Shown here one piece after another: positions 1,960 to 17,139 of a DNA stretch of 64,000 nucleotides. The notes beneath the pieces are model-generated. The model was not told where the DNA came from and made no database searches. It saw nothing but the letters and a program-made list of their open reading frames with translations. The DNA is taken from the sequence record LR745208.1, one strand, 5' to 3'. The translations under genes and the position numbers were made by a program. Position 1 is the stretch's first letter; each line of letters begins with the position of its first letter.

Positions 1960-2435
1960 TGAAGACCTTCCATGAGACACTAGCATCCCTTACGGTGGGA
2001 TGGGCCATCACCAATGTGGAGCCTGGGAGGGGACGGGAAGGGGGTCCAGCCAAACTCACCCTCAGCCGAGATGGCAACATCCGTACTTTGGAAATCCGGG
2101 CCGGTATCTATGAGCCCGTCATCGAGTCCGTTCAGGACAGGCAGCCGGGCTCCGGGAACCCTACCTACTCCGATGTGAGCGACATGCTAGATACGATCCT
2201 GGAACAGGTGTCCGCCTATGAGGATACCAACCACGATGGTTGCCGAATTGAGCCTCTAGAAGACGTGTTCGCCCGTCGGTTTGGTTTCCGGTGCGTGGAA
2301 ACAGGCCAGGAGTGGTGGACCACCATGAGTGCGGTCAAGGAATCCCGCCGTTACGCTTCTAGGTTCCGGTCTCCTGAATCCAGGCTGGAACTAGCCAACG
2401 ATCTTAGCCAAGGTGTAATTGGATGGGGAAGATAA
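1959..2435 (+). CDS. hypothetical protein
   Basis: 158 aa, coupled on both sides. Confidence 0.65.
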   Translation: MKTFHETLASLTVGWAITNVEPGRGREGGPAKLTLSRDGNIRTLEIRAGIYEPVIESVQDRQPGSGNPTYSDVSDMLDTILEQVSAYEDTNHDGCRIEPLEDVFARRFGFRCVETGQEWWTTMSAVKESRRYASRFRSPESRLELANDLSQGVIGWGR

Positions 2436-2779
2436 TGTACCAGATCCGGCGATTCATGGGCCACCAGGAACACCGTTGTGGGCACACCGTCTGTAACTGC
2501 AAAGGCCTGGACATCTGGGCACCCATCGTGGACCCGCGAACAAGGACCCCGGCTAACTACCACACCCACGGTGAGGCGGTACAGGACCTCCCGGATCTTC
2601 GGTTGGCCGTAGGACTCCAGGAAGGCGTGGAGCCCCGGGATCTTCGGGTGGAGAGGATCGAGTTGGGGCAGGCAGACCCAGACACCCGCCCTGTCAAAGA
2701 ACGTTCGACAAGGACGATTTCTTCCACGGAGGGGCTCAGAGGGGGTAAGGTAGGGGGGAGTCCACTTGACATCCTATAA
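2435..2779 (+). CDS. hypothetical protein
   Basis: TAATG overlap with the upstream gene. Confidence 0.5.
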   Translation: MYQIRRFMGHQEHRCGHTVCNCKGLDIWAPIVDPRTRTPANYHTHGEAVQDLPDLRLAVGLQEGVEPRDLRVERIELGQADPDTRPVKERSTRTISSTEGLRGGKVGGSPLDIL

Positions 2780-2793
2780 CCTGTCACTATACT
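2766..2793 (+). promoter_or_regulatory. sigma70-type promoter of the tRNA-Pro/Ala unit
   Basis: TTGACA-N16-TATACT. Confidence 0.75.
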
Positions 2794-2802
2794 GAACGGA
2801 CC

Positions 2803-2898
2803 ATGAACCTCTCGACCCACAGCACCAACACAGCACCAGCGGCGACAGCCGCTTGCGTGGTGGCGTGCGTGGGTCCAGCCGCCCCGCCCGCAGCCTAA
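2803..2898 (+). CDS. putative Ala/Pro-rich leader peptide MNLSTHSTNTAPAATAACVVACVGPAAPPAA
   Basis: ATG 10 nt after the -10 box. 10 Ala and 4 Pro of 31 codons; directly upstream of tRNA-Pro and tRNA-Ala. Confidence 0.6.
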   Translation: MNLSTHSTNTAPAATAACVVACVGPAAPPAA

Positions 2899-2948
2899 CG
2901 TCGTTGCACCCTCAACCAGTGGATGCGACTGAAAACAGGTTTGACTCA

Positions 2949-3023
2949 CGGGGAGTAGCTCAGTCTGGTTAGAGTATCCGGCTTGGAACCGGAGGGTCGC
3001 TGGTTCGAATCCAGTCTCCCCGA
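2949..3023 (+). tRNA. tRNA-Pro(UGG)
   Basis: Acceptor CGGGGAG/CTCCCCG, anticodon loop CT-TGG-AA, T loop TTCGAAT; CCA not encoded. Confidence 0.97.
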
Positions 3024-3046
3024 CTGTTTCGTTTCTCGTTTCGTTT

Positions 3047-3119
3047 GGGGCCATAACTCAATTGGCAGAGTGCTAGCCTTGCAAGCTGGAAGTTGCGAAT
3101 TCGAATTTCGCTGGCTCCA
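3047..3119 (+). tRNA. tRNA-Ala(UGC)
   Basis: Acceptor GGGGCCA/TGGCTCC with the G3:U70 Ala identity pair; loop CT-TGC-AA. Confidence 0.95.
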
Positions 3120-3149
3120 CCCTCAAATGATCCAGAATCCATAGGTACC

Positions 3150-3530
3150 ATGAGCCATTCAAGCGGACGCGTCTATTTGGATACGGACCAGCCAGATCCG
3201 GAACGGGAGCTGGTTGGCTGGTTTGAGTATGACGGGACCAGCGATTTTGCTCGGCCCAAGATATTCCCCACCCAGGATGAGATGTCTGCCTGTTGGCGTA
3301 AGGATCAAGGCAAAGTTACTTGCACCTGTGGGAAGCCCACCACAAAAGTGCTCATTGTTGCGGACTACGGGTGTATGCCCGAATGGCAGGGATATGCCTG
3401 CTTGACATGCATGGTGATCAGTGCACGACGTGGAAGGGATCCAGACTGGTCTTGGAAGGCCCGGGAGCGACAGTTCGGGGCCTTTGGATTCAGCAATGAG
3501 GAAGACGTGGAAGATGTGGATTGGGAGTAA
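3150..3530 (+). CDS. hypothetical protein (Cys-containing)
   Basis: 126 aa from the ATG at 3150. Confidence 0.6.
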   Translation: MSHSSGRVYLDTDQPDPERELVGWFEYDGTSDFARPKIFPTQDEMSACWRKDQGKVTCTCGKPTTKVLIVADYGCMPEWQGYACLTCMVISARRGRDPDWSWKARERQFGAFGFSNEEDVEDVDWE

Positions 3531-3536
3531 CCTAGA

Positions 3537-3848
3537 ATGAACTCAACCCAACCCACAACACCCTGCCCCCTCTGTGACCGAGTGGGTCCTCAACTGGTCC
3601 TGGAGAGGCACCACCTCAAGACACGTCGTGAGGACAAGGACCTGATTGAGCTGATATGTAAGGAGTGCCACAAACAAATTCATGCCCTGTTCCCCCAGCG
3701 GGACCTGAGGAACGAAGCTCTCAACCTAGATAGCGTTGAGGGACTCCTGGCCAATGAGAAGTTCTTGGCTGCCAGGAAGTTCATCCAGAAGGTCAAACCC
3801 GGCGAGACAATCAGGTCCCGAGAATCCAAACGGAGGCGGGGCTGGTGA
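3537..3848 (+). CDS. small HNH endonuclease-like protein
   Basis: CPLC...ERHH...ICKECHKQIH pattern. Confidence 0.75.
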   Translation: MNSTQPTTPCPLCDRVGPQLVLERHHLKTRREDKDLIELICKECHKQIHALFPQRDLRNEALNLDSVEGLLANEKFLAARKFIQKVKPGETIRSRESKRRRGW

Positions 3849-3849
3849 C

Positions 3850-4077
3850 ATGTCAGGAGCAAACGGCTATACCCCTGAGGAGTGGTTCGACCTACGGGTT
3901 CGGATGATGGCTGAAGTGTGGGTGGACGCGGACCACGTCATCTTTGAACGAATGTTCCGAGCGAATGGCATCCCCTGGGAACAGCCCTCCAAGGAGTCCC
4001 GAGAGAGGGAAATCATCGAGACCCTACCCATTGCCAGAAAACACCTAGAGGACTATGACAATAGGACGGATAGATGA
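3850..4077 (+). CDS. hypothetical protein
   Basis: 75 aa, coupled to the downstream methyltransferase. Confidence 0.55.
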   Translation: MSGANGYTPEEWFDLRVRMMAEVWVDADHVIFERMFRANGIPWEQPSKESREREIIETLPIARKHLEDYDNRTDR

Positions 4078-4700
4078 CGGCGACTGTTAGGGGTGGGGAC
4101 CGTACCTCTCTAGACACCTATCCAACACCTCCCTGGTGTGTCCAATCCCTAACAGGTGCCCTCTCCCTGCCACCGGGGAATTGGCTAGAGCCTTCAGCCG
4201 GGCAAGGGGCCATCATTCGAGCTGTCAACCGAAGTGATGTGCACTGGTCCGCGGTGGAGATCGACCCGACCCATGAGGCCACCCTTCGCCCCCTAGTGGC
4301 CAATGTCTACATGGGTGACTTCTTGGAAACCCAACTTGGCACCTTCGATGTGGTCATTGGGAACCCACCGTTTTCCAAGGCTCCCCAATTCGTTGAACGA
4401 TCTCTGGGTCTTGCCAATATCGTAGTCATGTTGCTGCGCCTGTCATTCGTGAGCACCAAAGGACGGTTTCACTTGATGGGCCACAATGCCCCGGATATGT
4501 ATGTCCTACCCGACCGACCCCAATTCGCAGGAACGAATCGAGATAGCAGTGACTATGCTTGGTTTGTCTGGCATGCCAATCAAAATCGGCGCCGAGGTAT
4601 CCTGCATGTCCTGGATCCCGTACCCCCTGCCAACAGGAAGCCTTTCCACATGGCAGACTATGAGGTTCCCTTCAATGTGTGTGACCTCTTGGTACAGTAG
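4074..4700 (+). CDS. orphan amino (N6-A/N4-C) DNA methyltransferase
   Basis: Motif I LEPSAGQGAI and catalytic GNPPF. Confidence 0.8.
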   Translation: MTATVRGGDRTSLDTYPTPPWCVQSLTGALSLPPGNWLEPSAGQGAIIRAVNRSDVHWSAVEIDPTHEATLRPLVANVYMGDFLETQLGTFDVVIGNPPFSKAPQFVERSLGLANIVVMLLRLSFVSTKGRFHLMGHNAPDMYVLPDRPQFAGTNRDSSDYAWFVWHANQNRRRGILHVLDPVPPANRKPFHMADYEVPFNVCDLLVQ

Positions 4701-4704
4701 TGGT

Positions 4705-4935
4705 ATGACGTTCCTTACAGGCTTCCTTCTCTTCCTTGCCTCTCTTCCCAACAACCATCATGTCTCACATAGGCCACCACCGAGGGTCAGACATTTATGG
4801 TGTTTCGTCACAGTCTTGCAACGGGCCGAAGTGCGGGTATGTGAGCCCACCCAGACAAGTTGCTGGGCTCGACGTGAGCTCATAGAGCATGGTGGGGCTC
4901 AGGTAGGGCAGTGTGCTCCTACAGCGGTCCCATGA
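4705..4935 (+). CDS. hypothetical protein with hydrophobic N-terminus
   Basis: ATG 4 nt after the previous stop; 76 aa. Confidence 0.4.
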   Translation: MTFLTGFLLFLASLPNNHHVSHRPPPRVRHLWCFVTVLQRAEVRVCEPTQTSCWARRELIEHGGAQVGQCAPTAVP

Positions 4936-5007
4936 CCAATCGTTAGCCCCCTGTCGATTTCCCTGGCTAATCGTCCTCTAGAAGCGTAGTATAGGTACAA
5001 GCCTCAA

Positions 5008-5040
5008 ATGAACCAGCATCTGCATCACCACTGTTATTGA
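5008..5040 (+). CDS. putative His/Cys/Tyr leader peptide MNQHLHHHCY
   Basis: ATG AAC CAG CAT CTG CAT CAC CAC TGT TAT TGA, immediately upstream of tRNA-Tyr, tRNA-Cys and tRNA-His. Confidence 0.6.
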   Translation: MNQHLHHHCY

Positions 5041-5073
5041 TCGCGTCGGCTGACGGCCGAGTTTCGCGATATA
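5035..5073 (+). promoter_or_regulatory. leader hairpin overlapping the leader stop codon
   Basis: ATCGCG-TCGGC-(TGACG)-GCCGA-GTTT-CGCGAT. The Tyr codon TAT can pair with ATA at 5071-5073. Confidence 0.6.
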
Positions 5074-5074
5074 C

Positions 5075-5159
5075 GGAGTGTTGCACCTGAGTGGAAAGGG
5101 TCCCGGCTGTAAACCGGGAGGCACTGCCAGCCCGGCTTCGATTTCCGGACACTCCACCA
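5075..5159 (+). tRNA. tRNA-Tyr(GUA)
   Basis: Acceptor GGAGTGT/ACACTCC, A73, encoded CCA, loop CT-GTA-AA, long variable arm. Confidence 0.9.
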
Positions 5160-5161
5160 AT

Positions 5162-5235
5162 GAATCCTTGCCCGAACGGCCAGGGAGGAGCCTGCAAAGC
5201 TCTCTAAGTGGATTCGACTTCCACAGGATTCTCCA
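5162..5235 (+). tRNA. tRNA-Cys(GCA)
   Basis: Acceptor GAATCCT/AGGATTC, U73 Cys discriminator, encoded CCA, loop CT-GCA-AA. Confidence 0.9.
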
Positions 5236-5255
5236 AGTGTTTCTGAAAGACGACC

Positions 5256-5303
5256 ATGAAGACCACGAACCCCCATCGACCCCATAGGACCTGCCGCCGG
5301 TAA
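5256..5303 (+). CDS. possible second leader peptide MKTTNPHRPHRTCRR
   Basis: 15 codons with 2 His and 4 different Arg codons; its end lies in hairpin CCGCCGG/CCGGCGG (5294-5317); upstream of tRNA-His. Confidence 0.4.
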   Translation: MKTTNPHRPHRTCRR

Positions 5304-5338
5304 CGAGCACCCGGCGGTTAATCCCTGGCTCTTTGTTT

Positions 5339-5412
5339 GTGGCTGTGGGGTAGTGGTTGCCCGCTGGGCTGTGAACCCGGAAGTGCTGGATCGTAACCAG
5401 CCAGTCACTCCA
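5339..5412 (+). tRNA. tRNA-His(GUG), atypical
   Basis: Acceptor GTGGCTG/CAGTCAC, loop CT-GTG-AA, encoded CCA. T loop is ATCGTAA, and U-1/U73 replace G-1/C73. Confidence 0.8.
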
Positions 5413-5417
5413 TTTGG

Positions 5418-5457
5418 GGGCAGGATCCGAAAAGGTTCCGCTGCCCGTTCTCGTTTT
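5418..5457 (+). terminator. possible intrinsic terminator after the tRNA cluster
   Basis: GGGCAG...CTGCCC stem followed by a T-rich stretch. Confidence 0.35.
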
Positions 5458-5494
5458 CCACCTTCTGCTGCCCCCTCATGGTGTAACGTCCTCT

Positions 5495-5701
5495 ATGCGG
5501 TACAAGAACATCGCGAACCACCCTGAGTTTTCCAAGCAGGCCAAGAAGACGGATGACTTGAAGGCTGCCCTTATCTACTATGGCGCCAGCCTTAGCCCGG
5601 ATGCTCTCAAGGCGGTCCAAGCTGACTACAAGAGGGCAGAGATCAAGATCCAACGGCTCTGCAAGGTCCTGGACAAGCAGGGCTACCGGGAGTTTCTCTG
5701 A
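5495..5701 (+). CDS. hypothetical protein
   Basis: 68 aa, helical composition. Confidence 0.55.
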   Translation: MRYKNIANHPEFSKQAKKTDDLKAALIYYGASLSPDALKAVQADYKRAEIKIQRLCKVLDKQGYREFL

Positions 5702-5705
5702 TGCC

Positions 5706-6485
5706 ATGGACCGTCTTGAACAAGCCCAAGGCTTCTACGGAGGCGTCTTGAACAAGCCCAAGGCTTCTACGGAGGCTAAATGCGATGCCCTGGACGAAAT
5801 TCTTGATGCGGATCCCGCGAACCAGGAAGCCCTTCAATATGTGATCCGGGAACTCTCGAAGGACTTCGAGGATGAGCCAGAAGATACTTGGTTAAGGCAC
5901 CTGCTGTACATTGCAGAGACCACTCAAGTATTTGACCCCTATGCCAGGATGCAACTCTATCAGGGCCTATTGCGTCAAGCCCTGTGGGTATGTGAGGATC
6001 TGGAACGCCTACGAGGACGGGAGACTTTAATCTGGTCAGCAGTACGCCGGGCAGCCTCTATTGTAGACCCAATAGACCGCCTCACTGATTTTCTGCCCGT
6101 CCTTCAGTCTGGTATTGCAAGTGGGGTCTACTCCATTCAGCAATGTGTCCTACAGGGCATCCAGAACACCTTGGGGGGGAGGACTACCCATGATGTGCTC
6201 ACCCCAGCCAGTCAAAAGGTCCTCCAAGGTGTGGTCAGGGAGAGACTTGAGTTCCTGTTGGCCGCCCCAACGTCCGCGAGGGGCAGTGAGACTGACTATC
6301 AGACCCGTGCGGGTTACTCTGCCCTGCTGGTCAATGTCCTGGCCACTATGGAAGGCTTACAGGATGACACATATCAGGAAGCCCTGATTAGGGTGGCCGC
6401 CACGGTGCCCCCACAAACTATGTCTACGATCCGCCGTTTCTTGGACCTGAAGCGAGAACAACTCAAGAACCCCAAGGTATCGTAA
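5706..6485 (+). CDS. helical hypothetical protein; start is ambiguous because of the duplication
   Basis: 259 aa from ATG 5706. Confidence 0.65.
   Translation: MDRLEQAQGFYGGVLNKPKASTEAKCDALDEILDADPANQEALQYVIRELSKDFEDEPEDTWLRHLLYIAETTQVFDPYARMQLYQGLLRQALWVCEDLERLRGRETLIWSAVRRAASIVDPIDRLTDFLPVLQSGIASGVYSIQQCVLQGIQNTLGGRTTHDVLTPASQKVLQGVVRERLEFLLAAPTSARGSETDYQTRAGYSALLVNVLATMEGLQDDTYQEALIRVAATVPPQTMSTIRRFLDLKREQLKNPKVS
5713..5776 (+). repeat. perfect 32-bp tandem duplication
   Basis: GTCTTGAACAAGCCCAAGGCTTCTACGGAGGC twice (5713-5744, 5745-5776). Confidence 0.95.
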
Positions 6486-6489
6486 GACC

Positions 6490-6741
6490 ATGAACAAAAA
6501 GGACAAGATTTTGGGCTCCTACTACATCCACGTCTGCAACAGTGGAACCACCATCGGGGTCCGAGACCGTAAAGGGGCCATAGGTCACGAGATATACATA
6601 GAGAGCGGGTTTTTTGGGCTTGGCTCAACTGAAATGGTGATTGGGGGAAGGGGTGGGGACTATTGTGGAGTCCATGCCTCTGATCTTCGAGAGCTGGCTG
6701 CCATGTTCACCAAGGTAGCGGACCAGATCGAGGGCAAGTGA
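6490..6741 (+). CDS. hypothetical protein
   Basis: 83 aa, operon-like packing. Confidence 0.6.
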   Translation: MNKKDKILGSYYIHVCNSGTTIGVRDRKGAIGHEIYIESGFFGLGSTEMVIGGRGGDYCGVHASDLRELAAMFTKVADQIEGK

Positions 6742-7064
6742 TGCCTAGTGGATACCTAGCCTACCGGGACATGATGGCAGAAATTGATGGGGGCCCCACA
6801 GACAAAGAGGCTCGGGCCAAGCTGTGGTCCGAAAAGGGGATCACCTCACGGGACCTTCGGTGGGAGGGTCCTGAGAATGAGGGTAATGGGACCGTTATCT
6901 TCCAGCATGGGAAGCCTGTGTACTTGATGTGGTATGAGTGGAACATCACCTACGAGAACCTGATGGCATCTTTGCAGAAGGACCTGGGTGGTCTATTCCT
7001 GAAGCTAGTGGACGTGAGGGGTGGAAACGGCCATTATTCGGCTGGTTTGGATGTCATAGGATGA
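6741..7064 (+). CDS. hypothetical protein
   Basis: TGATG coupling. Confidence 0.6.
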   Translation: MPSGYLAYRDMMAEIDGGPTDKEARAKLWSEKGITSRDLRWEGPENEGNGTVIFQHGKPVYLMWYEWNITYENLMASLQKDLGGLFLKLVDVRGGNGHYSAGLDVIG

Positions 7065-7807
7065 AGGCCCTTAAGCCTAACGCCATCCTGAGGGTCTTCA
7101 AGCGCCCCCGGGTCTTCCTACCGGTCATTCACACGCCTACCCTCCAAGAGGCATTGTCGTCCGTGGAAGTGGCCATTGAGGCAGGGGCGGATGGTGTCAT
7201 CCTGATCAACCAGGGGATGACCGTTAAGGCCATTATGGGAGACCTGTTGCCACGGCTCCCCCTCCTGGCAGGCTATCCAGGGATGTGGACGGGCCTCAAT
7301 GCCCTTTCGTACACCCCCGAGGAGGCCGTGGGGCTAGCAGCCCTGTATGGGATTGATGGAGTCTGGTCCGATGATGCAGGGGTAGACCATCGAACTGCGG
7401 ATGAACGGTATGCCGCAGGGAGTACCTTCCTTGAGACCAGGAATCGCCACAACTGGGGGGGCCTGTACTTTGGAGGAACTGCCTTCAAGACACAGACGGA
7501 AGTTGAACTTGCGGACCTTGCTGAAACGGCCAGAGCTGCAATGGGCTTCGTGGATGTGGTGACCACCTCAGGTCGTGGGACAGGGGTTGCCGCCCAGCTA
7601 TCCAAAGTACGTGCAATCCGAGAGGCTATCGGGAACCATCCGATGGCCCTGGCCAGTGGCGTCACCCCCGAGAATGTCCACCAATATCTGCCCTACGTGG
7701 ATGCCTACTTGGTGGCTACCGGTATTGAATCTGACTTCGGGGTCCTGGACCCTGAACGTACCCGAGCACTTGCGGAAGCAATTCATGGGTGGGCTCCGGG
7801 ACCATGA
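7061..7807 (+). CDS. BtpA/SgcQ-family TIM-barrel protein
   Basis: LPVIH, GADGV, YFGGTAFK, VVTTSGRGTG, ALASGVTPENV and LVATGI motifs. Confidence 0.75.
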   Translation: MKALKPNAILRVFKRPRVFLPVIHTPTLQEALSSVEVAIEAGADGVILINQGMTVKAIMGDLLPRLPLLAGYPGMWTGLNALSYTPEEAVGLAALYGIDGVWSDDAGVDHRTADERYAAGSTFLETRNRHNWGGLYFGGTAFKTQTEVELADLAETARAAMGFVDVVTTSGRGTGVAAQLSKVRAIREAIGNHPMALASGVTPENVHQYLPYVDAYLVATGIESDFGVLDPERTRALAEAIHGWAPGP

Positions 7808-8010
7808 GAACGCCAGCGGAGGCTTGGGGCCTTACAGAAGACGAGATGGATGATGTCGTTCGTGCAGCATTTGAGCTGCGACCAATGATTCCCCCTACTC
7901 AACACGAACGAGCTCGCATCGCCGAGGCCCTCAAGAAGTATGTTGAAATCAAACAGGGGCATGGGTGGGCTCCGCCGGGTGTGCCCCCGGGAGTAAGGAG
8001 GAGACCATGA
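7804..8010 (+). CDS. hypothetical protein
   Basis: ATGA coupling. Confidence 0.55.
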   Translation: MRTPAEAWGLTEDEMDDVVRAAFELRPMIPPTQHERARIAEALKKYVEIKQGHGWAPPGVPPGVRRRP

Positions 8011-11382: not shown

Positions 11383-12000
11383 ATGAAACAATATCCGTCG
11401 ATCTCCAAGGACCACATCCATGGAGTCCCCTTCTACGTCTTCGACAAACTTGATGGCAGCAATTTGCGTGCAGATTTTTCGGCCAAGAAAGGATTCTGGA
11501 AATTCGGCACCCGGACCCGTCTCACGGATCTATCGGATCCTATTGGGAAACTTGCCCTTCCACTGATTCAGGCCCAAGAGGCAGCTTTTGCAGCCCTCTT
11601 CCAATCCCTCCGAGAACGAGAAGCCACCTGTTTCTTCGAGTTCTGGGGCCCCTCTTCGTTTGCCGGAGTCCACGACTACCAGGAAGCGGGGCACCGGGTA
11701 GACCTAATTGACGTGTCGATCCATCGAAGAGGCTTCATGGGGCCCAAGGAATTTGTGAAGACTTTCGAGGGGCATGTTCCAACAGCTCCGCTGCTCTACA
11801 TGGGGAATGTCACCGAGGACCTCACCCAAGCGGTCTGGGACGGAACCCTACCTGGAATGACATTCGAGGGAGTTGTCTGTAAGGGGGCCCCCCTCAAAAA
11901 GGGCTATCCTCCTCACATGTTCAAGCTCAAGAGCCAAGCCTGGATAGCTCGGGTGAAGTCCCTCTACACGGATCCGGCCGTCTTGGCAGAACTCCTGTAG
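11383..12000 (+). CDS. RNA ligase-family (Rnl2-like) nucleotidyltransferase
   Basis: Motif I KLDGSN, FFEFWG, LIDV, EGVVCK and FKLKS. Confidence 0.75.
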   Translation: MKQYPSISKDHIHGVPFYVFDKLDGSNLRADFSAKKGFWKFGTRTRLTDLSDPIGKLALPLIQAQEAAFAALFQSLREREATCFFEFWGPSSFAGVHDYQEAGHRVDLIDVSIHRRGFMGPKEFVKTFEGHVPTAPLLYMGNVTEDLTQAVWDGTLPGMTFEGVVCKGAPLKKGYPPHMFKLKSQAWIARVKSLYTDPAVLAELL

Positions 12001-13977: not shown

Positions 13978-14342
13978 GGGAACTCAAAAACAAGCTGCCC
14001 GAGAATGTGAAGCGGGACATCCCTATCGATTTGGTGGGGGTCCGAGAGTCCCGAAAGTTCTCTTCAGGCAAGGTACAAGGGCCCGATGATCCGGCCCGTC
14101 ACTGGCTTCGCTCATTGAATGAGATTACTCGTCCTTGGGAGATCAAGGACCAGTCCCTAATCGAACAGGAGCGGGCCTTCGCAAGGCACCAGTTCAACCT
14201 TGGCCTCCGAGATGTGGTGCTCGAAACAGCCGTGGCCATGGAGCAGGCCCGACGCCGGGGAACAGACTCCCAGAAGACGTACACCCGGGGAGCCTTTGAG
14301 AAGGCCCTGGCTGACTTCATGGTGGCCCTGGAGATCGAATAG
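13974..14342 (+). CDS. hypothetical protein
   Basis: 122 aa, ATGA coupling. Confidence 0.6.
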   Translation: MRELKNKLPENVKRDIPIDLVGVRESRKFSSGKVQGPDDPARHWLRSLNEITRPWEIKDQSLIEQERAFARHQFNLGLRDVVLETAVAMEQARRRGTDSQKTYTRGAFEKALADFMVALEIE

Positions 14343-14354
14343 TACAGCCACCCC

Positions 14355-14383
14355 TTGACACCTCGGTAATTCGTCTTTAGACT
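14355..14383 (+). promoter_or_regulatory. sigma70-type promoter of the Leu tRNA array
   Basis: TTGACA-N17-TAGACT. Confidence 0.8.
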
Positions 14384-14395
14384 ACACAGGACACC

Positions 14396-14485
14396 ATGTT
14401 CGATCGTGCAACCAACTCCATTCCGAGCCTGAAGCTAGAGCTATTGCTTAGCTGTGCCGGGGTGGATTTATGCACTCGTGCGTAG
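14396..14485 (+). CDS. putative Leu leader peptide MFDRATNSIPSLKLELLLSCAGVDLCTRA
   Basis: AGGA upstream. Leu codons CTG, CTA, CTA, TTG, CTT and TTA; precedes five Leu tRNAs. Confidence 0.65.
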   Translation: MFDRATNSIPSLKLELLLSCAGVDLCTRA

Positions 14486-14517
14486 GTCTGAGGTCCCCGG
14501 CAGCAAGTAGGTAGCTT
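14432..14517 (+). promoter_or_regulatory. long imperfect leader hairpin
   Basis: AAGCTA/TAGCTT, TTGCT/AGCAA, GCCGGGG/CCCCGGC and an 11-bp apical stem (14464-14474 with 14479-14489, including G-U pairs). It ends 1 nt before the first tRNA. Confidence 0.7.
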
Positions 14518-14605
14518 GGCCGGGTGATGGAATTTTGGAAGACATGCTGGTCTCAGAAGCCAGTGGGAGTAACTTCCCGTGAGGGTTCGATGCCCTTCCC
14601 GGCCA
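14518..14605 (+). tRNA. tRNA-Leu(CAG)
   Basis: Acceptor GGCCGGG/CCCGGCC, loop CT-CAG-AA, long variable arm, A73. Confidence 0.93.
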
Positions 14606-14609
14606 CTCT

Positions 14610-14691
14610 GCATGAGTGGTGTAACTGGTAGCCACGTAGGAATGAGAGTCCTATGTCGAAAGACGTGCAGGTTCGATCCCTGTCTCATGCA
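14610..14691 (+). tRNA. tRNA-Leu(GAG)
   Basis: Acceptor GCATGAG/CTCATGC, loop AT-GAG-AG, variable arm GTC-GAAA-GAC. Confidence 0.88.
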
Positions 14692-14710
14692 CTGTTTCTT
14701 TAATGTTTTC

Positions 14711-14795
14711 GCGAGGATGGCGGAATTGGCAGACGCGCCGGACTTAGGATCCGGTACCGCAAGGTGTAGGGGTTCAAGTCCCCTTTCTCGCACCA
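14711..14795 (+). tRNA. tRNA-Leu(UAG)
   Basis: Canonical fold, loop CT-TAG-GA, encoded CCA. Confidence 0.97.
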
Positions 14796-14837
14796 ACAGC
14801 TGGAAGTAGGTGAAGACTAAAACAACAATGATTTCCT

Positions 14838-14919
14838 GGGTTATTGGTGAAATTGGCAGCCACGCACCATTCAAAATGGTGTCCCGCAAGGGGTATCGGT
14901 TCAAGTCCGTTATAACCCA
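14838..14919 (+). tRNA. tRNA-Leu(CAA)
   Basis: Acceptor GGGTTAT/ATAACCC, loop TT-CAA-AA. Confidence 0.92.
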
Positions 14920-14923
14920 CTAC

Positions 14924-15006
14924 GGCCCTGTGATGGAATTGGCAGACATTCTCCCACTTAAAACGGGAGGCCGCGAGGCATCCGGGTTCAAGTCCCGGTA
15001 GGGCCA
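14924..15006 (+). tRNA. tRNA-Leu(UAA)
   Basis: Acceptor GGCCCTG/TAGGGCC. Anticodon arm CTCCC-A-CTTAAAA-C-GGGAG carries an extra A/C pair. Confidence 0.85.
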
Positions 15007-15635
15007 CCTATATTTTTTCCACAGTACGTGGGAGTCTGTGAGTGGCAGTTGGGGCACAGTAACCTCAGGTTTTCCAGGCGATGGTCCGTGGGGACCCCAT
15101 TCTTGTGGTCTAGGTGCAAGGAAATTGGCTTCCCCTTCCATGTGGTCAAAAGGCAGTCCGGGTCAGAGCATTCATATCTTAGTACTCCCTCTTTGACAAG
15201 ACGTTTACTAAGGTGGTTGGTCCCATAGGTGCTATTCTCAACCAATAACTCTGACAATGGCATCTTAACTGACCACGAGTGGGTTTTCCCCTTCAAGTGT
15301 CCCTGTCCTGTCCAGTGCGTGGTACTCAAACCCAACCGGAGAATATGTTGCCGAATGGTCTTGTAGTTCCCCCCAACAGGGGACAACCCCAATTCCCTTA
15401 AGACCATGGCCATGGTAAATTGGGTAGCCACGGCCCGTGTGAGTTGTTCCTCTGACCATTTCTTGAAGTGTACCGCCCAATGCTCGGACTTTAACCCTAA
15501 GCGCCCCATATGCGTTTGGATAGTCTTCGCATTACTGCTATTGGGGTAAAGCCCCAATTCCCTCAGCACCTCTGACATGGAAAACTTCGTGGTTACGGCC
15601 TGAATTAGCTGAGTGTCGGTCCATGTTCTTGACAT
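14988..15635 (-). CDS. HNH (homing-type) endonuclease
   Basis: Two N-terminal W..EQL..AV...LRELGL repeats and C-terminal LDHKNG...NLRLLCPNCH. Confidence 0.9.
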   Translation of the reverse strand: MSRTWTDTQLIQAVTTKFSMSEVLRELGLYPNSSNAKTIQTHMGRLGLKSEHWAVHFKKWSEEQLTRAVATQFTMAMVLRELGLSPVGGNYKTIRQHILRLGLSTTHWTGQGHLKGKTHSWSVKMPLSELLVENSTYGTNHLSKRLVKEGVLRYECSDPDCLLTTWKGKPISLHLDHKNGVPTDHRLENLRLLCPNCHSQTPTYCGKNIGGPTGT

Positions 15636-15724
15636 TTTGCCTCCGGTGGGGCTTGGTCAATGGGCAGCCTCTACCGAAGGGCTATCAATTGGCTAACTAG
15701 CGGATTCACCAGCTCATCAAACGG

Positions 15725-16852
15725 CTACTTCAACTTGGCCATGAATTCAACAATCTCGTTTGGCAGGGGCATTCCTAAGACCAGATGGGCGAAGGCTTCG
15801 GCGAAGTTTTCGGTCCATTTGGTGGCTCCATAGGGTGTGACGGCAATGGGTTCCCGTAGGACCTTGCCAGTCATGAGGGTCACGTCCTTCTTGCCAGCAA
15901 TGCCTTCGTGGAGTTCCTTCTCATCGATCTTCCCGGAGAGGAACTCAGTGGTGAGTTGCCGGGCCTCTCGGGGACCGTCAGGGGACTTCAACCACATGAC
16001 CAGTTCTGGGGACATGGGGACCATGGGCTTACCTAGTCCGCGGGCCTTGGTGAGCGACACTACCTCATCAGCCATCCGATTGCGTAAGTCCTTGTCGAAC
16101 AGCACTTCCTCGTAGACCGTGCGGGTGGACAGGTCAAAAAACTCTCGGGTCAGCTCTGCGCTGAGGAACCGGTGTTGGTACCGGTGCCCCAGTTCATGAG
16201 CTATTGTGTGGACATCCCCAAACCTAGATTGGGCGTTCACACTTACATAGAACTGATCTCCAGAGGGGGTATACCAAGCCGCTGATTTGCTATTCAGGTG
16301 TGTGGAAAGGTGTACCTTACCATACAGAACCTCAGGGAAGACCCTCTGGATTTTTCCAGTTGCCTCATCGAGAGCTTTGAGGGCCCCCTCAATTTTTGAG
16401 ACTGGGACTCCTGGCATCGGGACGATCTCGAAAGGTCCCCGTTTGATGATCCGGTCTTCATCCGTTGCTGCACTGGCAATTTCCAAGGTGCGTAGGGGTT
16501 TGGCCCAGGTCTCGAACCTTCTGATCCAAACGGATTGGAACATGTCCGAATTGAGGATCCCATGACGCATGTCCAAGAATTCACGGACATCCTTCTGGAG
16601 GGCATTGATTGCATTGCGCTTGGCGGTTCCAAGGGCCAAGTACCAATCCGCAGGTACTGGCGCCCCAAAATCCCCAGTGGTCCTATCAGTTGGGAAGATC
16701 AGGCTCAGAACGGTCTTCCCAAACTTCGCCATAGGGTCCATATCCTTCTTCTCGAAGGCTTCCTGGGCTTTCTTGAAGTCTGGGAGGAGGGATACCCCTT
16801 TGGCTTGGAGGAACCGGGAGGCTACCCGGTCGGCTTGGGGAACTTGGGACAT
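15725..16852 (-). CDS. zincin metallopeptidase (anthrax lethal factor-like), probably virion-associated
   Basis: HELGH plus TPYGATKWTENFAEAF; N-terminal DRVASRFL motif. Confidence 0.65.
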   Translation of the reverse strand: MSQVPQADRVASRFLQAKGVSLLPDFKKAQEAFEKKDMDPMAKFGKTVLSLIFPTDRTTGDFGAPVPADWYLALGTAKRNAINALQKDVREFLDMRHGILNSDMFQSVWIRRFETWAKPLRTLEIASAATDEDRIIKRGPFEIVPMPGVPVSKIEGALKALDEATGKIQRVFPEVLYGKVHLSTHLNSKSAAWYTPSGDQFYVSVNAQSRFGDVHTIAHELGHRYQHRFLSAELTREFFDLSTRTVYEEVLFDKDLRNRMADEVVSLTKARGLGKPMVPMSPELVMWLKSPDGPREARQLTTEFLSGKIDEKELHEGIAGKKDVTLMTGKVLREPIAVTPYGATKWTENFAEAFAHLVLGMPLPNEIVEFMAKLK

Positions 16853-16884
16853 GTCATTCTGGTAGGGGGATAGAAGCGTTAGGC

Positions 16885-17139
16885 TCAGTTCCGTTCCCGC
16901 CTCAGTGCCTCCTCGGCATCTTGGATAAGCCCATCGAGCTTGTCCGTAAACTCCTTGCCCCGTGTAGCAATGGTATTCTCTAGGATGTCCGCCATGGCAT
17001 GGGCTTCTGGTCCACAGTGGGTACACCAATAAATCTTGGCTCCTGGCTCCACGTCACTGAAGTCCATTGTGTACCGCTCGTCCGGGACTCCTAAGCAACC
17101 TGGATTCCCATAGTCACGACAGACAATCTCGATTGTCAT
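16885..17139 (-). CDS. hypothetical protein
   Basis: 84 aa from the ATGA overlap. Confidence 0.6.
   Translation of the reverse strand: MTIEIVCRDYGNPGCLGVPDERYTMDFSDVEPGAKIYWCTHCGPEAHAMADILENTIATRGKEFTDKLDGLIQDAEEALRRERN

What the first reader, a model, noticed from the sequence alone, without database searches (positions are those of the whole stretch)
2766..3119. Ala/Pro leader upstream of tRNA-Pro(UGG) and tRNA-Ala(UGC)
Seen: TTGACA-N16-TATACT, then an ATG only 10 nt later (a nearly leaderless transcript) encoding MNLSTHSTNTAPAATAACVVACVGPAAPPAA. It uses all four Ala codons and three Pro codons, clustered at the 3' end (CCA GCC GCC CCG CCC GCA GCC TAA). Hairpin GCGGC-GACA-GCCGC (2839-2852) lies on Ala codons, and GGCGAC (2841-2846) can alternatively pair with GTCGTT (2900-2905). 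Inference: mutually exclusive folds gated by ribosome position. Caveat: GC-rich DNA favours Ala/Pro codons by chance.
Basis: partly seen in the sequence, partly recalled or inferred. Interest (0 to 1): 0.72.

Follow-up and report, generated by a model that had tools for sequence, protein, structure and literature searches.

The report
Codon-matched leader ORFs before phage tRNAs
In this 485-kb phage almost every tRNA operon is preceded by a tiny reading frame packed with the codons that the downstream tRNAs decode, which looks like a built-in sensor that makes tRNAs on demand, an arrangement I could not find described anywhere.

Summary
TTGACA-N16-TATACT (2766-2793) is followed 9 nt later by a 31-codon Ala/Pro-rich ORF (2803-2898), a hairpin, then tRNA-Pro(UGG) and tRNA-Ala(UGC).

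It is not an isolated case. The window comes from huge phage LR745208 (485 kb), where 31 of 37 tRNAs sit behind a short ORF rich in their own amino acids:
- MNQHLHHHCY* precedes Tyr/Cys/His.
- A leader using one codon for each of five Leu anticodons precedes the five tRNA-Leu genes.
- Glu/Asp, Arg/Gly, Thr, Gln, Asn and Ser have equivalents.

No shuffling of leaders against amino-acid sets reaches the observed match (0 of 500,000). Seven other tRNA-rich phages show nothing (p=0.99).

In a groundwater relative the Pro/Ala promoter and ORF are about 95% identical with an in-frame 6-nt insertion. Flanking DNA and tRNA-Pro are only about 50% identical. Two other leaders behave the same way.

Stop codons always lie inside a hairpin that ends 0-7 nt before the tRNA.

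Best reading: a ribosome stalling on the leader reports scarcity of that charged tRNA and raises tRNA output. Whether this works by transcription attenuation or by gating tRNA processing is unresolved. I found no prior description.

The parts
2766..2793 (+). Sigma-70-type promoter TTGACA-N16-TATACT of the Pro/Ala tRNA operon
   Evidence: It matches the consensus at 11 of 12 bases. It is one of only 4 matches to TTGAC[AT]-N16-18-TA[TG]A[CA]T in the whole 485-kb genome, and all 4 lie upstream of tRNA clusters. Both hexamers are conserved in relative L036 while 3 spacer bases differ.
2803..2898 (+). Leader ORF MNLSTHSTNTAPAATAACVVACVGPAAPPAA* (10 Ala and 4 Pro codons in 31)
   Evidence: It is the first ATG after the -10 box, 9 nt downstream. 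Its own amino-acid set ranks first in the permutation matrix. In L036 it is conserved in frame, with 2 synonymous and 2 non-synonymous changes and a 6-nt insertion.
2805..2810 (+). 5' strand of the closing helix (GAACCU), which pairs with 2937-2942
   Evidence: It appears in the minimum-energy and centroid folds. The C-to-U change in L036 keeps a G-U pair.
2814..2875 (+). Hairpin I (GACCCAC...GUGGGUC) with apical GCGGC-GACA-GCCGC. It covers the first Ala/Pro codon block.
   Evidence: It is present in both phages. The 6-nt insertion in L036 adds pairs to it, and the synonymous ACA-to-ACT change falls in the apical loop.
2876..2931 (+). Hairpin II. Its 5' arm is the distal Ala/Pro codons plus the stop codon, and its 3' arm is in the spacer.
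   Evidence: It is predicted in both phages although the 3' arm is only 30% identical. However, the pairing is not better than with a shuffled 3' arm (z=-0.2 and -0.9), so this part is weakly supported.
2937..2942 (+). 3' strand of the closing helix (AGGUUU), 6 nt before tRNA-Pro
2949..3024 (+). tRNA-Pro(UGG)
   Evidence: ARAGORN and Rfam at 68.4 bits.
3046..3122 (+). tRNA-Ala(UGC)
   Evidence: ARAGORN and Rfam at 65.5 bits.
5008..5040 (+). Leader ORF MNQHLHHHCY* (4 His, 1 Cys, 1 Tyr) ahead of tRNA-Tyr, tRNA-Cys and tRNA-His
   Evidence: In relative L032 it reads MNQHLQHHHCY*, a 3-nt in-frame insertion with no substitutions.
5040..5070 (+). Terminal hairpin that starts at the last base of the stop codon and ends 4 nt before tRNA-Tyr
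   Evidence: It is 100% identical in L032.
5075..5235 (+). tRNA-Tyr(GUA) at 5075-5159 and tRNA-Cys(GCA) at 5162-5235
   Evidence: They are 78% and 64% identical to the L032 copies.
5256..5303 (+). Internal mini-ORF MKTTNPHRPHRTCRR* (2 His) between tRNA-Cys and tRNA-His
   Evidence: It is 98% identical in L032, with one change (Pro to Thr).
5293..5318 (+). An 8-bp hairpin GCCGCCGG...CCGGCGGU with the stop codon UAA in its loop, followed by a U-rich tail
   Evidence: The C-to-T change in L032 keeps a G-U pair.
5339..5412 (+). tRNA-His(GUG)
14355..14383 (+). Promoter TTGACA-N17-TAGACT of the Leu operon
   Evidence: It matches the consensus at 10 of 12 bases. It is one of the 4 genome-wide matches.
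14396..14485 (+). Leader ORF MFDRATNSIPSLKLELLLSCAGVDLCTRA* with Leu codons CTG CTA CTA TTG CTT TTA
   Evidence: Each of the five downstream Leu anticodons (CAG, GAG, UAG, CAA, UAA) has its own codon in the leader. The probability of this given the phage's codon usage is 0.019.
14438..14517 (+). Long terminal hairpin (-40.6 kcal/mol). Its 5' arm starts at the Leu codon run, the stop codon is in its 3' arm, and it ends at the base before tRNA-Leu.
14518..15008 (+). Five tRNA-Leu genes (CAG, GAG, UAG, CAA, UAA)

Best explanation
The Ala/Pro ORF is a translated leader. It acts as a sensor of decoding capacity for the tRNA operon that follows it, and it is one of a genome-wide set of such sensors in this huge phage.

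Proposed sequence of events:
1. Host-type RNA polymerase starts at a strong sigma-70-like promoter.
2. A ribosome starts at an AUG that lies only a few bases from the 5' end, with no Shine-Dalgarno sequence.
3. The ribosome reads a short frame whose distal part is packed with the codons decoded by the downstream tRNAs.
4. The stop codon sits inside a hairpin whose 3' arm reaches the tRNA 5' end.
5. If the cognate charged tRNA is scarce, the ribosome stalls on these codons and holds the 5' arm of the hairpin open. Scarcity could come from a codon-usage mismatch, loss of host tRNAs during infection, or cleavage by host anticodon nucleases. With the hairpin open, the tRNAs are transcribed and matured.
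6. If the tRNA is plentiful, the ribosome finishes and leaves, the hairpin forms, and tRNA output falls.

The most likely implementation is ribosome-mediated transcription attenuation of the simple occlusion type, because leaders carry codons for all tRNAs of their operon.

Shown here: the sequence architecture, the codon-to-tRNA match, the hairpin geometry and the conservation. Inferred: that the ORFs are translated, that ribosomes stall on them, the direction of the response, and the termination step.
For: **Replication within the genome.** Ten leaders with unrelated sequences each have their own operon's amino-acid set as the top-ranked set. None of 500,000 permutations reaches the observed match. 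A permissive any-frame test gives Fisher p=1e-3, or 2e-4 when internal spacers are included. Internal spacers tested separately give an exact permutation p of 0.017.

**Codon level.** In all 6 multi-isoacceptor cases every downstream isoacceptor is sampled by a codon in the leader. The joint probability is about 0.0016, and for Leu alone 0.019.

**Negative control.** The same statistic applied to 44 tRNA units in 7 other large phages gives p=0.99.

**Shared architecture.**
- The near-consensus promoter occurs only 4 times in 485 kb, always before a tRNA operon.
- The leader ATG is the first ATG, 9-21 nt after the -10 box.
- The start context ACC-ATG-AA(C/A) is unusual for this genome.
- The 5' parts of the leaders are C-rich and G-poor (p=0.003).

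**Geometry.** In all 11 leaders that stop before a tRNA, the stop codon lies inside the terminal hairpin and the hairpin ends 0-7 nt before the tRNA. A ribosome stalled at 54 of the 74 cognate codons would cover the 5' arm. Thirteen of 14 leaders fold better than their shuffles. The regions upstream of the tRNAs are more structured than in control phages (p=0.011).

**Conservation in the groundwater relative.**
- Pro/Ala: promoter plus ORF are about 90-100% identical, against 46% upstream and 30-51% downstream. An in-frame 6-nt insertion is present, and a Thr-to-Pro change adds a cognate codon.
- Tyr/Cys/His: the leader has no substitutions and one in-frame 3-nt insertion, while the tRNAs are 64-78% identical.
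- Gln: the leader is 100% identical while the tRNAs are 53-58% identical.

**Precedent.** Leaderless cognate-codon leader ORFs that act as attenuators are documented in Deinococcus (PMC4007540) and mycobacteria (doi 10.1101/834739). tRNAs are known targets of bacterial immunity that phage-encoded tRNAs counteract (PMC12409363).
Against: - There are no transcript 5' ends, ribosome profiling or expression data, so translation and stalling are inferred.
- Only about half of the terminal hairpins are followed by a U-rich tail. The Pro/Ala, Tyr/Cys/His, Leu, Glu/Asp and Arg/Gly leaders lack one. No separate pause hairpin or antiterminator is evident. Classical intrinsic-terminator attenuation is therefore not demonstrated.
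- The pairing of hairpin II in the Pro/Ala leader is not better than chance.
- Six of 37 tRNAs have no cognate leader: Met, Ser-GCU, Ser-GGA, Ser-UGA, one Arg-CCU and a weak suppressor-like tRNA. Some leaders are weak (the first Lys segment, and the Gly and Phe internal spacers).
- Only one relative lineage was found and it is close. Conservation is so high at the nucleotide level that it cannot separate selection on the peptide frame from selection on the RNA. Only two in-frame indels support the frame, and the chance of both being multiples of 3 is about 0.11.
- In operons with mixed amino acids and long spacers, terminating before the first tRNA would also shut off unrelated downstream tRNAs. 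That fits per-tRNA control better than whole-operon attenuation.
Confidence: 0.62

Rival explanations
1. The sensor is the same but the output is different: ribosome-gated tRNA maturation rather than transcription termination. The terminal hairpin locks the 5' leader of the pre-tRNA up to position -1, or ribosomes translating into or through the tRNA sequence keep it unfolded. Either way RNase P cannot process the tRNA. A ribosome stalled upstream on the cognate codons frees the 3' arm and leaves the tRNA free to fold, so a stored precursor is matured on demand.
For: - Hairpins end 0-7 nt from the RNase P cleavage site in all 11 cases, and many lack a U-tract.
- Stop codons lie 6 and 8 nt before tRNA-Arg(CCU) and tRNA-Arg(UCU), so a terminating ribosome would cover the first bases of the tRNA.
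- Three ORFs run straight through tRNA genes and carry cognate codons before each next tRNA: L004 27955-28374, 18787-19200 and 12730-12900.
- The frame through tRNA-Ile and tRNA-Phe is also open in relative L028, although those tRNAs are only 45-54% identical.
- The short leaders have no obvious RNA polymerase pause element.
Against: - Leaders before tightly packed operons carry codons for all the tRNAs in the operon, including ones whose 5' ends are far from the hairpin. Examples are Cys and His codons before tRNA-Tyr, and all five Leu isoacceptors. Control of the whole transcript explains that more simply.
- Inhibition of RNase P by such hairpins is assumed from general knowledge, not tested here.
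- The hairpin-to-tRNA gap in control phages has a similar median (6 against 5 nt).
Confidence: 0.22
2. Rho-dependent attenuation. The C-rich, G-poor 5' half of each leader is a Rho loading site. It is exposed when ribosomes finish and leave, and it is masked when ribosomes queue behind a ribosome stalled at the cognate codons.
For: - The first 36 nt of the leaders have C 0.37 and G 0.18, significantly different from ordinary gene starts (p=0.003).
- Many hairpins lack U-tracts.
- From general knowledge, Rho-dependent leader-ORF control is known (tnaC, and the mgtA/mgtCBR leaders).
Against: - In the longer leaders the C-rich segment is predicted to be base-paired (hairpin I of Pro/Ala).
- The leaders are short for a Rho loading site.
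- The host and its Rho are unknown.
- The same composition is equally expected for an unstructured region that allows Shine-Dalgarno-independent initiation.
Confidence: 0.06
3. The ORFs are not translated. The codon runs act as RNA, for example by pairing directly with tRNA anticodons in a T-box-like manner. Alternatively they are a by-product of composition or of structural requirements in pre-tRNA leaders.
For: - Conservation in the relative is at the nucleotide level, with almost no synonymous change in the distal codon blocks. This shows RNA-level constraint.
- There is no Shine-Dalgarno sequence.
- The Pro/Ala enrichment taken alone is modest (p=0.009).
Against: - The cognate codons are always in frame with the first ATG after the promoter and are followed shortly by a stop codon.
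- Both indels inside ORFs are multiples of three, while those outside are 1, 2, 4 and 7 nt.
- Mixed synonymous codons match the set of isoacceptors. Alternation of CAA and CAG only makes sense in the Gln frame.
- There is no T-box or other Rfam match.
- Control phages of similar GC content, including L020 at 57% and L026 at 64%, show no enrichment.
Confidence: 0.06
4. The short ORFs encode functional micro-peptides unrelated to tRNA regulation.
For: The ORFs have conserved start and stop codons.
Against: The peptides share no sequence with one another apart from MN/MK starts. Their composition tracks the downstream tRNAs. Their lengths vary from 10 to 47 residues, and a function as peptides gives no reason for the match to anticodons.
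Confidence: 0.02

Closest known systems
Leader-peptide transcription attenuators of amino-acid biosynthesis and aminoacyl-tRNA synthetase operons (trpL, hisL, leuL, thrL, ilvL, pheL; pheM of pheST)
   Same: A short ORF lies at the 5' end of the transcript and is enriched in the codons of the amino acid being regulated. Leaders can be multivalent and mix several amino acids, as in ilv and thr. RNA hairpins overlap the end of the ORF. The logic is that a ribosome stalling at hungry codons increases expression of the genes that relieve the shortage.
   Different: - The regulated genes are tRNA genes, so the loop closes on the tRNA itself rather than on amino-acid supply or charging.
- There is no Shine-Dalgarno sequence, and the AUG lies next to the promoter.
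- There is no recognisable four-segment pause, antiterminator and terminator arrangement. Instead a single hairpin holds the stop codon and ends at the tRNA.
- A U-tract is present in only about half of the cases.
- The elements are encoded by a phage, in about ten copies across one genome.
Leaderless cognate-codon leader ORFs of Deinococcus deserti (PMC4007540) and the polycysteine leaderless short ORFs of mycobacteria (doi 10.1101/834739)
   Same: Translation starts at or next to the transcript 5' end. The ORFs are very short (about 10 codons), contain runs of one amino acid's codons, and control the operon downstream. The cysS leader of Deinococcus is 10 codons long, like MNQHLHHHCY here.
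   Different: Those ORFs control synthetase, biosynthesis or cysteine-metabolism genes in cellular genomes. None is reported upstream of tRNA genes or in a phage. Here the transcript 5' ends are only predicted, and the distance from the -10 box to the ATG is 9-21 nt.
T-box riboswitches
   Same: They are cis-acting leaders that read the state of one specific tRNA and switch a downstream hairpin.
   Different: A T-box binds uncharged tRNA directly through a single specifier codon and a conserved T-box sequence, without a ribosome, and it regulates synthetase or amino-acid genes. Here there is no Rfam T-box match, the codons are tandem and in frame between an ATG and a stop, and the regulated genes are tRNAs.
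tRNA gene clusters of large phages (T4, T5, KVP40, huge phages), seen as codon-usage compensation or as a counter to host tRNA-targeting defences (PMC12409363)
   Same: The phage has a near-complete tRNA set (37 genes covering nearly all amino acids), clustered among small genes and next to RNA-ligase genes.
   Different: No codon-matched leader ORF has been described for those clusters. I saw none in seven other large phages analysed here with the same statistic.

Membership tests
Ribosome-mediated (leader-peptide) transcription attenuator | A short ORF with start and stop codons lies in the 5' leader of the regulated transcript | tested here: met
   The ORF at 2803-2898 is the first ATG after the -10 box, and the equivalent holds at 9 promoter-proximal leaders. 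That it lies on the same transcript is inferred from the promoter position.
Ribosome-mediated (leader-peptide) transcription attenuator | The leader is enriched in codons cognate to what is regulated | tested here: met
   None of 500,000 permutations reaches the observed match, and each leader's own set ranks first in 10 of 10 cases. Fisher p is 1e-3 to 2e-4 against the genome background. All isoacceptors are covered in 6 of 6 cases. The control phages give p=0.99.
Ribosome-mediated (leader-peptide) transcription attenuator | An intrinsic terminator (stable hairpin followed by a U-tract) lies between the leader ORF and the regulated genes | tested here: inconclusive
   A terminal hairpin is present in all 11 leaders and ends 0-7 nt before the tRNA. 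A U-rich tail follows only in the Gln, Asn, Thr, His, Val and Arg-UCU cases. It is absent for Pro/Ala, Tyr/Cys/His, Leu, Glu/Asp and Arg/Gly.
Ribosome-mediated (leader-peptide) transcription attenuator | An antiterminator fold, mutually exclusive with the terminator, is selected by ribosome position | tested here: inconclusive
No distinct antiterminator was found. The geometry fits direct occlusion of the hairpin's 5' arm by the ribosome instead.
Ribosome-mediated (leader-peptide) transcription attenuator | Read-through increases when the cognate charged tRNA is limiting | not testable with these tools
   This needs reporter assays, Northern blots or coupled in vitro transcription-translation.
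Leaderless cognate-codon short-ORF attenuators (Deinococcus, mycobacteria) | The transcript starts at or within a few nt of the AUG, with no Shine-Dalgarno sequence | tested here: inconclusive
   The distance from the -10 box to the ATG is 9 nt for Pro/Ala, predicting a 5' UTR of about 2-3 nt. It is 12-21 nt for the others. No Shine-Dalgarno motif is present in most leaders. No data on transcript 5' ends exist.
Leaderless cognate-codon short-ORF attenuators (Deinococcus, mycobacteria) | A run of codons for one amino acid (or a few) lies in a very short ORF upstream of an operon | tested here: met
   Examples are MNQHLHHHCY*, MRFFTTTRTRTAGLTRKG* and ...QPRQQPQQQQQ*.
T-box riboswitch | A match to the T-box covariance model (stem I specifier loop plus the T-box sequence) | tested here: not met
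   Rfam at gathering threshold finds only tRNAs in the window and in L001, L003 and L004. An E<=10 scan of the Gln leader finds nothing relevant.
tRNA genes (the regulated products) | A cloverleaf recognised by two independent detectors | tested here: met
   ARAGORN and Rfam agree for tRNA-Pro and tRNA-Ala and for most of the other tRNAs, all on the + strand. One extra tRNA (Asn, L003 43196-43269) is found by Rfam only.

The most novel reading that the evidence does not exclude
The phage runs a genome-wide, demand-driven tRNA supply circuit in which translation and tRNA maturation compete on the same RNA. Ribosomes that start at the promoter-proximal AUG translate along the primary transcript, in some operons straight through the tRNA sequences. 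Each tRNA is licensed for folding and processing only when the ribosome stalls on that tRNA's own codons placed just upstream. The phage would then replace exactly those tRNA species that infection or host anticodon nucleases remove. The regulatory leaders would be held constant while the tRNA bodies diversify to escape cleavage.
Probability: 0.2. Interest if true: 0.95.

Novelty: new variant of a known kind. Interest (0 to 1): 0.82.

Why it matters
Leader-peptide attenuation has been a textbook mechanism for 45 years. As far as I know, and as far as six full-text searches show, it has been tied only to amino-acid biosynthesis, transport and synthetase genes, never to tRNA genes themselves.

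If it works as proposed, it would be the first example of tRNA genes regulated by direct feedback from decoding of their own codons. It would also give a concrete answer to an open question in phage biology: how large phages control their tRNA arsenals. That question has become pressing now that tRNA cleavage is recognised as a widespread antiphage defence.

It would further supply about ten natural, compact and orthogonal sensors, each specific for one charged tRNA species, which could be used as reporters of tRNA depletion.

The observation that the leaders are far more conserved than the tRNAs they precede suggests an arms race acting on the tRNA bodies. That idea can be tested.

Everything proposed here is directly testable with short synthetic constructs in laboratory strains.

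Tried and rejected
It is not seen in any predicted fold, including ribosome-masked folds.
2. **Covariation support for hairpin II of the Pro/Ala leader.** The 3' arm differs almost completely in the relative and still pairs, but shuffled 3' arms pair as well (z=-0.2 and -0.9). I dropped this as evidence.
3. **Pairing of the Pro codons (CCCCG) with the tRNA-Pro acceptor strand (CGGGG).** Longer folds suggested it. The relative's tRNA-Pro starts CGGAGAT, so it is not conserved.
4. **A tRNA-Trp hidden in the Phe-Gln spacer.** The block is cloverleaf-shaped with a CCA anticodon-like loop, but there is no Rfam tRNA match even at E<=10. It remains unexplained.
5. **Generality across tRNA-rich phages.** Seven large phages found through a shared RNA ligase carry 44 tRNA units and show no enrichment.
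6. **The search for relatives.**
   - Four IMG/VR scans with neighbouring proteins found only the phage itself or distant phages.
   - A JGI metagenome scan with the conserved leader block found only the phage itself.
   - Ligase homologues at 57-65% identity have no tRNAs nearby.
   - Nine further contigs carry the same phage with 100% identical leaders, so they give no polymorphism data.
   - In relative L032 an HNH-like gene abuts tRNA-Ala and the contig ends there, so the leader is not visible on that contig. It was recovered from L036 instead.
7. **Codon bias of the Pro/Ala leader toward the codons read by U34 anticodons.** GCA plus GCG make up 5 of 10 Ala codons, and CCA plus CCG make up 3 of 4 Pro codons. 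This is not significant against codon usage.
8. **Literature.** Six searches combining leader peptide or attenuator with tRNA genes, operons or clusters, or with huge phages, returned nothing describing this.
Full report
**1. The observation**

- TTGACA(2766-2771)-N16-TATACT(2788-2793) matches the sigma-70 consensus at 11 of 12 bases. It is the best such match in the first 16 kb.
- An ATG follows 9 nt after the -10 box. The ORF 2803-2898 encodes MNLSTHSTNTAPAATAACVVACVGPAAPPAA*.
- It has ten Ala codons (all four kinds) and four Pro codons (three kinds). Seven of its last eight codons are Ala or Pro.
- The hairpin GCGGC-GACA-GCCGC is at 2839-2852.
- tRNA-Pro(UGG) at 2949-3024 and tRNA-Ala(UGC) at 3046-3122 are found by both ARAGORN and Rfam.
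- The window has no N stretches.

**2. Where the window comes from**

Window 2000-8000 is 100% identical to LR745208.1, an unannotated 485,034-bp metagenomic 'uncultured phage'. The same genome is IMG/VR UViG_3300025030_000038. The window corresponds to about 186-250 kb of that record. I read the rest of the record in pieces.

The genome holds 37 tRNA genes, 36 by ARAGORN plus one found only by Rfam. All are on the + strand, and most lie between about 142 and 201 kb.

Neighbouring genes are mostly of unknown function. Those with matches are two RNA-ligase-like proteins, a NUDIX protein and methyltransferases.

**3. The finding is one of a series**

Two more examples lie in the same window.
- Upstream of tRNA-Tyr, tRNA-Cys and tRNA-His is ATG 5008, encoding MNQHLHHHCY*.
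- Upstream of five tRNA-Leu genes is a second TTGACA-N17-TAGACT promoter and the ORF 14396-14485, MFDRATNSIPSLKLELLLSCAGVDLCTRA*. Its six Leu codons (CTG CTA CTA TTG CTT TTA) include one for each of the five downstream anticodons CAG, UAG, CAA, GAG and UAA.

Elsewhere in the genome:

| tRNAs | Leader upstream |
|---|---|
| Glu/Asp/Glu | MNSYTTSERERESDSERT* |
| Arg x3, Gly x2 | ...HGRDGGTLARGCGRVQRRRRIRPTT*, with the stop 6 nt before the tRNA |
| Thr x3 | MRFFTTTRTRTAGLTRKG* |
| Gln x2 | ...LQPRQQPQQQQQ* |
| Asn (+Lys?) | MYALLKPGTLNRNANA* |
| Ser(CGA) | ...TSTWWSSSLSVSRS* |

The Ile/Phe/Gln and Lys/Val/Arg operons carry the cognate codons in the spacer before each tRNA.

In all, 31 of 37 tRNAs lie behind a cognate leader. 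Six do not: Met, Ser-GCU, Ser-GGA, Ser-UGA, one Arg-CCU and a weak suppressor-like tRNA.

**4. Statistics**
- *Permissive test.* This test gives no credit for the ATG or promoter. It takes the best 12-codon window in any frame within 150 nt upstream and compares it with random positions in this genome. Fisher p is 1e-3 for 13 primary units and 2e-4 with internal spacers. Pro/Ala alone gives p=0.009.
- *Permutation test.* I scored ten objectively defined leader ORFs (first ATG after the -10 box) against the ten amino-acid sets. Each leader's own set ranks first, and none of 500,000 permutations reaches the observed match.
- *Internal spacers.* Seven other spacers between tRNAs, tested separately, give an exact permutation p of 0.017.
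- *Codon level.* In all six operons with several isoacceptors, every isoacceptor has its own codon in the leader. The joint probability under the phage's codon usage is about 0.0016, and for Leu alone 0.019.
- *Negative control.* Seven other large phages, found through a shared RNA ligase, carry 44 tRNA units and have GC contents of 30-64%. The same statistic gives Fisher p=0.99, with 2 of 44 units below 0.05.

So the statistic is not biased by composition, and the design is not a general property of phage tRNA clusters.

**5. Shared anatomy**
- *Promoter.* TTGAC[AT]-N16-18-TA[TG]A[CA]T occurs only four times on both strands of the 485 kb. All four lie 134-183 nt upstream of a tRNA cluster with a leader. 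Looser versions of the motif precede the other leaders.
- *Start site.* The leader ATG is always the first ATG, 9-21 nt after the -10 box. There is usually no Shine-Dalgarno motif. The start context (g)ACC-ATG-AA(C/A) is rare among ordinary genes of this phage: ACC precedes the ATG in 5 of 14 leaders against about 4%, and the second residue is N or K in 8 of 14 against about 10%.
- *Composition.* The first 36 nt of the leaders are C-rich and G-poor (C 0.37, G 0.18; p=0.003 against gene starts).
- *Hairpin geometry.* In all 11 leaders that stop before a tRNA, the stop codon lies inside the terminal hairpin (5'-arm edge, loop or 3' arm) and the hairpin ends 0-7 nt before the tRNA. A ribosome stalled at 54 of the 74 cognate codons (footprint to +14 nt) would cover the 5' arm.
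- *Folding.* Thirteen of 14 leaders fold better than dinucleotide shuffles, with a mean z of about -1.9. Pro/Ala scores -2.1 and its homologue -3.1. The 60 nt before these tRNAs are more structured than in the control phages (p=0.011).
- *U-tracts.* Only about half of the hairpins are followed by a U-rich tail.

**6. The Pro/Ala leader in detail**

Both the window and its relative fold into the same arrangement.
- A closing helix pairs GAACCU 2805-2810 with AGGUUU 2937-2942.
- Hairpin II spans 2876-2931. Its 5' arm is the distal Ala/Pro block plus the stop codon.

Hairpin II pairs no better than it does with a shuffled 3' arm. No U-tract follows it.

**7. Comparative evidence**

Relatives are scarce. 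IMG/VR and the JGI metagenomes hold only the phage itself. Nine further contigs of the same phage from other samples are 100% identical across the leader.

One related phage exists in a groundwater metagenome (ENA ERZ909576). Its neighbouring proteins are 73-87% identical. Three of its short contigs reach leaders.

- *L036, Pro/Ala.* The -35 box, -10 box, ACC-ATG and TAA are all conserved.

  | Segment | Identity |
  |---|---|
  | Upstream of the -35 box | 0.46 |
  | Promoter | 0.89 |
  | -10 box to ATG | 1.00 |
  | Leader ORF | 0.90 |
  | First 9 nt after the stop | 1.00 |
  | Spacer | 0.30-0.39 |
  | tRNA-Pro | 0.51 |

All the gap columns in the ORF belong to a single in-frame 6-nt insertion. 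The relative's ORF is MNFSTHSTNPAPAATAACVVACVYVGPAAPPAA*. It has two synonymous changes and two non-synonymous changes, one of which (Thr to Pro) adds a cognate codon.
- *L032, Tyr/Cys/His.* The leader reads MNQHLQHHHCY*, a 3-nt in-frame insertion with no substitutions. The hairpin is 100% identical. The tRNAs are 64-78% identical. The His mini-ORF is 98% identical, and the one change in its hairpin keeps a G-U pair.
- *L028, Phe/Gln.* The Gln codons, the stop and the hairpin are 100% identical. The tRNAs are 45-58% identical.

In all three operons the leaders are much more conserved than the tRNAs they precede. Indels inside ORFs are 3 and 6 nt. Indels outside ORFs are 1, 2, 4 and 7 nt.

The limits of this evidence are that there is only one relative lineage, and that conservation is so strong at the nucleotide level that it cannot separate constraint on the frame from constraint on the RNA.

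**8. Interpretation**

The best-supported reading is that these are translated leader ORFs. They report, through ribosome stalling, a shortage of the charged tRNAs that the operon encodes, and they raise tRNA output in response. This is the logic of classical leader-peptide attenuation. It is also the logic of the leaderless cognate-codon ORFs of Deinococcus (PMC4007540) and mycobacteria (doi 10.1101/834739).

For a phage with a near-complete tRNA set and RNA ligases nearby, such a circuit would replace tRNAs that become limiting. Causes could be a codon-usage mismatch or host tRNA-targeting defences, which phage tRNAs are known to counter (PMC12409363).

The architecture, the codon matching, the geometry and the conservation are shown here. 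Translation, stalling, the sign of the response and the molecular output are inferred.

**9. Mechanism: what is open**

I favour transcription attenuation by direct occlusion of the hairpin's 5' arm. The reason is that leaders before tightly packed operons carry codons for every tRNA in the operon, for example His and Cys codons ahead of tRNA-Tyr, or all five Leu isoacceptors.

Against this view, U-tracts are missing in half of the cases, and I see no pause or antiterminator element.

A serious rival is gating of tRNA maturation. Its support is as follows:
- The hairpins abut the RNase P cleavage site.
- Two stop codons lie only 6-8 nt before a tRNA.
- Three ORFs run straight through tRNA genes, with cognate codons before each next tRNA:
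  - L004 18787-19200 runs K,K | tRNA-Lys | V,V,V | tRNA-Val | R,R,R and stops 8 nt before tRNA-Arg(UCU).
  - L004 27955-28374 runs through tRNA-Ile and tRNA-Phe to the Gln run.
  - L004 12730-12900 runs through tRNA-Ser(GCU) to the Ser run.
- The Ile-Phe-Gln frame is also open over 108 codons in relative L028, where those tRNAs are only 45-54% identical and both other frames are full of stops. The chance that a given frame is stop-free across one tRNA is 0.38.

A Rho-dependent variant is suggested by the C-rich 5' halves of the leaders. It cannot be excluded.

**10. Comparison with known systems and novelty**

The element works like a leader-peptide attenuator. It meets the ORF and codon-enrichment criteria of that family. 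It is inconclusive on the terminator and antiterminator criteria. It differs in what it regulates.

It is not a T-box, since there is no Rfam match.

Six full-text searches found no report of leader peptides upstream of tRNA genes, in phages or in cells. That library does not cover most subscription journals.

I classify it as a new variant of a known kind, with high interest.

Noticed in passing
L004 18787-19200; L004 27955-28374; L004 12730-12900 (record about 167.3, 176.5 and 161.2 kb); relative L028 1-336: Three ORFs start next to a promoter and run straight through tRNA genes (Lys+Val, Ile+Phe, Ser-GCU). They end in a run of cognate codons just before the next tRNA. The Ile-Phe-Gln frame is also open in the relative although its tRNAs are only about 50% identical. 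This suggests ribosomes may translate across tRNA sequences in the primary transcript.
   Followed up: partly
Alignments A1-A3: window 2766-2907, 5008-5074 and 5256-5303; L004 28258-28401: Between the phage and its groundwater relative, the leader ORFs and hairpins are 90-100% identical, while the tRNA genes they precede are only 45-78% identical. This is the reverse of the usual pattern. The tRNA-Pro and tRNA-Gln genes look replaced or fast-evolving.
   Followed up: partly
L004 28258-28352 (between tRNA-Phe and tRNA-Gln): A 95-nt block is 98% identical in the relative. It folds as a cloverleaf (acceptor CGGGGTTG/CAACCCCG, 7-nt loop CTCCAAA with CCA at the anticodon position) but has a 3-nt D-loop and an atypical T-loop. 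Neither ARAGORN nor Rfam (even at E<=10) calls it a tRNA. The genome otherwise has no tRNA-Trp.
   Followed up: partly
Whole record; window 2766-2793 and 14355-14383; L003 45187; L004 26447: The near-consensus sigma-70 promoter occurs only four times in 485 kb, and each time before a tRNA operon. This suggests that the tRNA operons are transcribed by a different route (host polymerase, perhaps early in infection) from most phage genes.
   Followed up: partly
Window 5256-5264; L004 5166-5174; L028 184-192; L004 28105, 28231, 19084: Internal mini-ORFs begin 1-20 nt after the 3' end of the preceding tRNA, often as ACC-ATG-AA(A/G) with the ATG overlapping an encoded CCA end. Processing of the upstream tRNA would therefore leave a leaderless mRNA. 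Two of them share the start MKTT.
   Followed up: no
L032 3-530 and 521-592 (relative): In the relative, an HNH-endonuclease-like ORF ends inside tRNA-Ala, at the place where the window has tRNA-Pro followed by a 21-nt spacer. This looks like a homing-endonuclease insertion in the tRNA operon.
   Followed up: no
L003 43332-43406 and L003 43196-43269; L001 7629-7705: ARAGORN reports a tRNA with a four-base anticodon (ttta), scored by Rfam at 50.7 bits. Next to it is a tRNA-Asn(GTT) seen only by Rfam. Elsewhere there is a weak suppressor-like tRNA (tta; 29.5 bits, at the Rfam threshold).
   Followed up: no
Window 11383-12000; L004 29248-30405; L001 about 5970-6230: Two RNA-ligase-family genes lie next to the tRNA clusters: PF09414 at 25.9 bits for the window copy, and PF09414 plus PF21189 for the L004 copy. 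By eye, there is also a peptidyl-tRNA-hydrolase-like ORF beside tRNA-Arg(CCU). Together these suggest a tRNA repair and translation-maintenance island.
   Followed up: partly
Window 2423-2779 (+) and 2557-3054 (-): Gene callers annotate a 114-118-aa ORF that overlaps the -35 box. The relative has no detectable similarity to window 2436-2761, so this ORF is probably spurious or dispensable. The 165-aa minus-strand ORF across the leader and tRNA-Pro is an artefact of GC-rich sequence.
   Followed up: partly
Window about 14000-18000: Cumulative GC skew rises up to about 14-16 kb and then falls steadily to the end of the window. This suggests a switch of gene orientation just after the Leu tRNA operon.
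   Followed up: no
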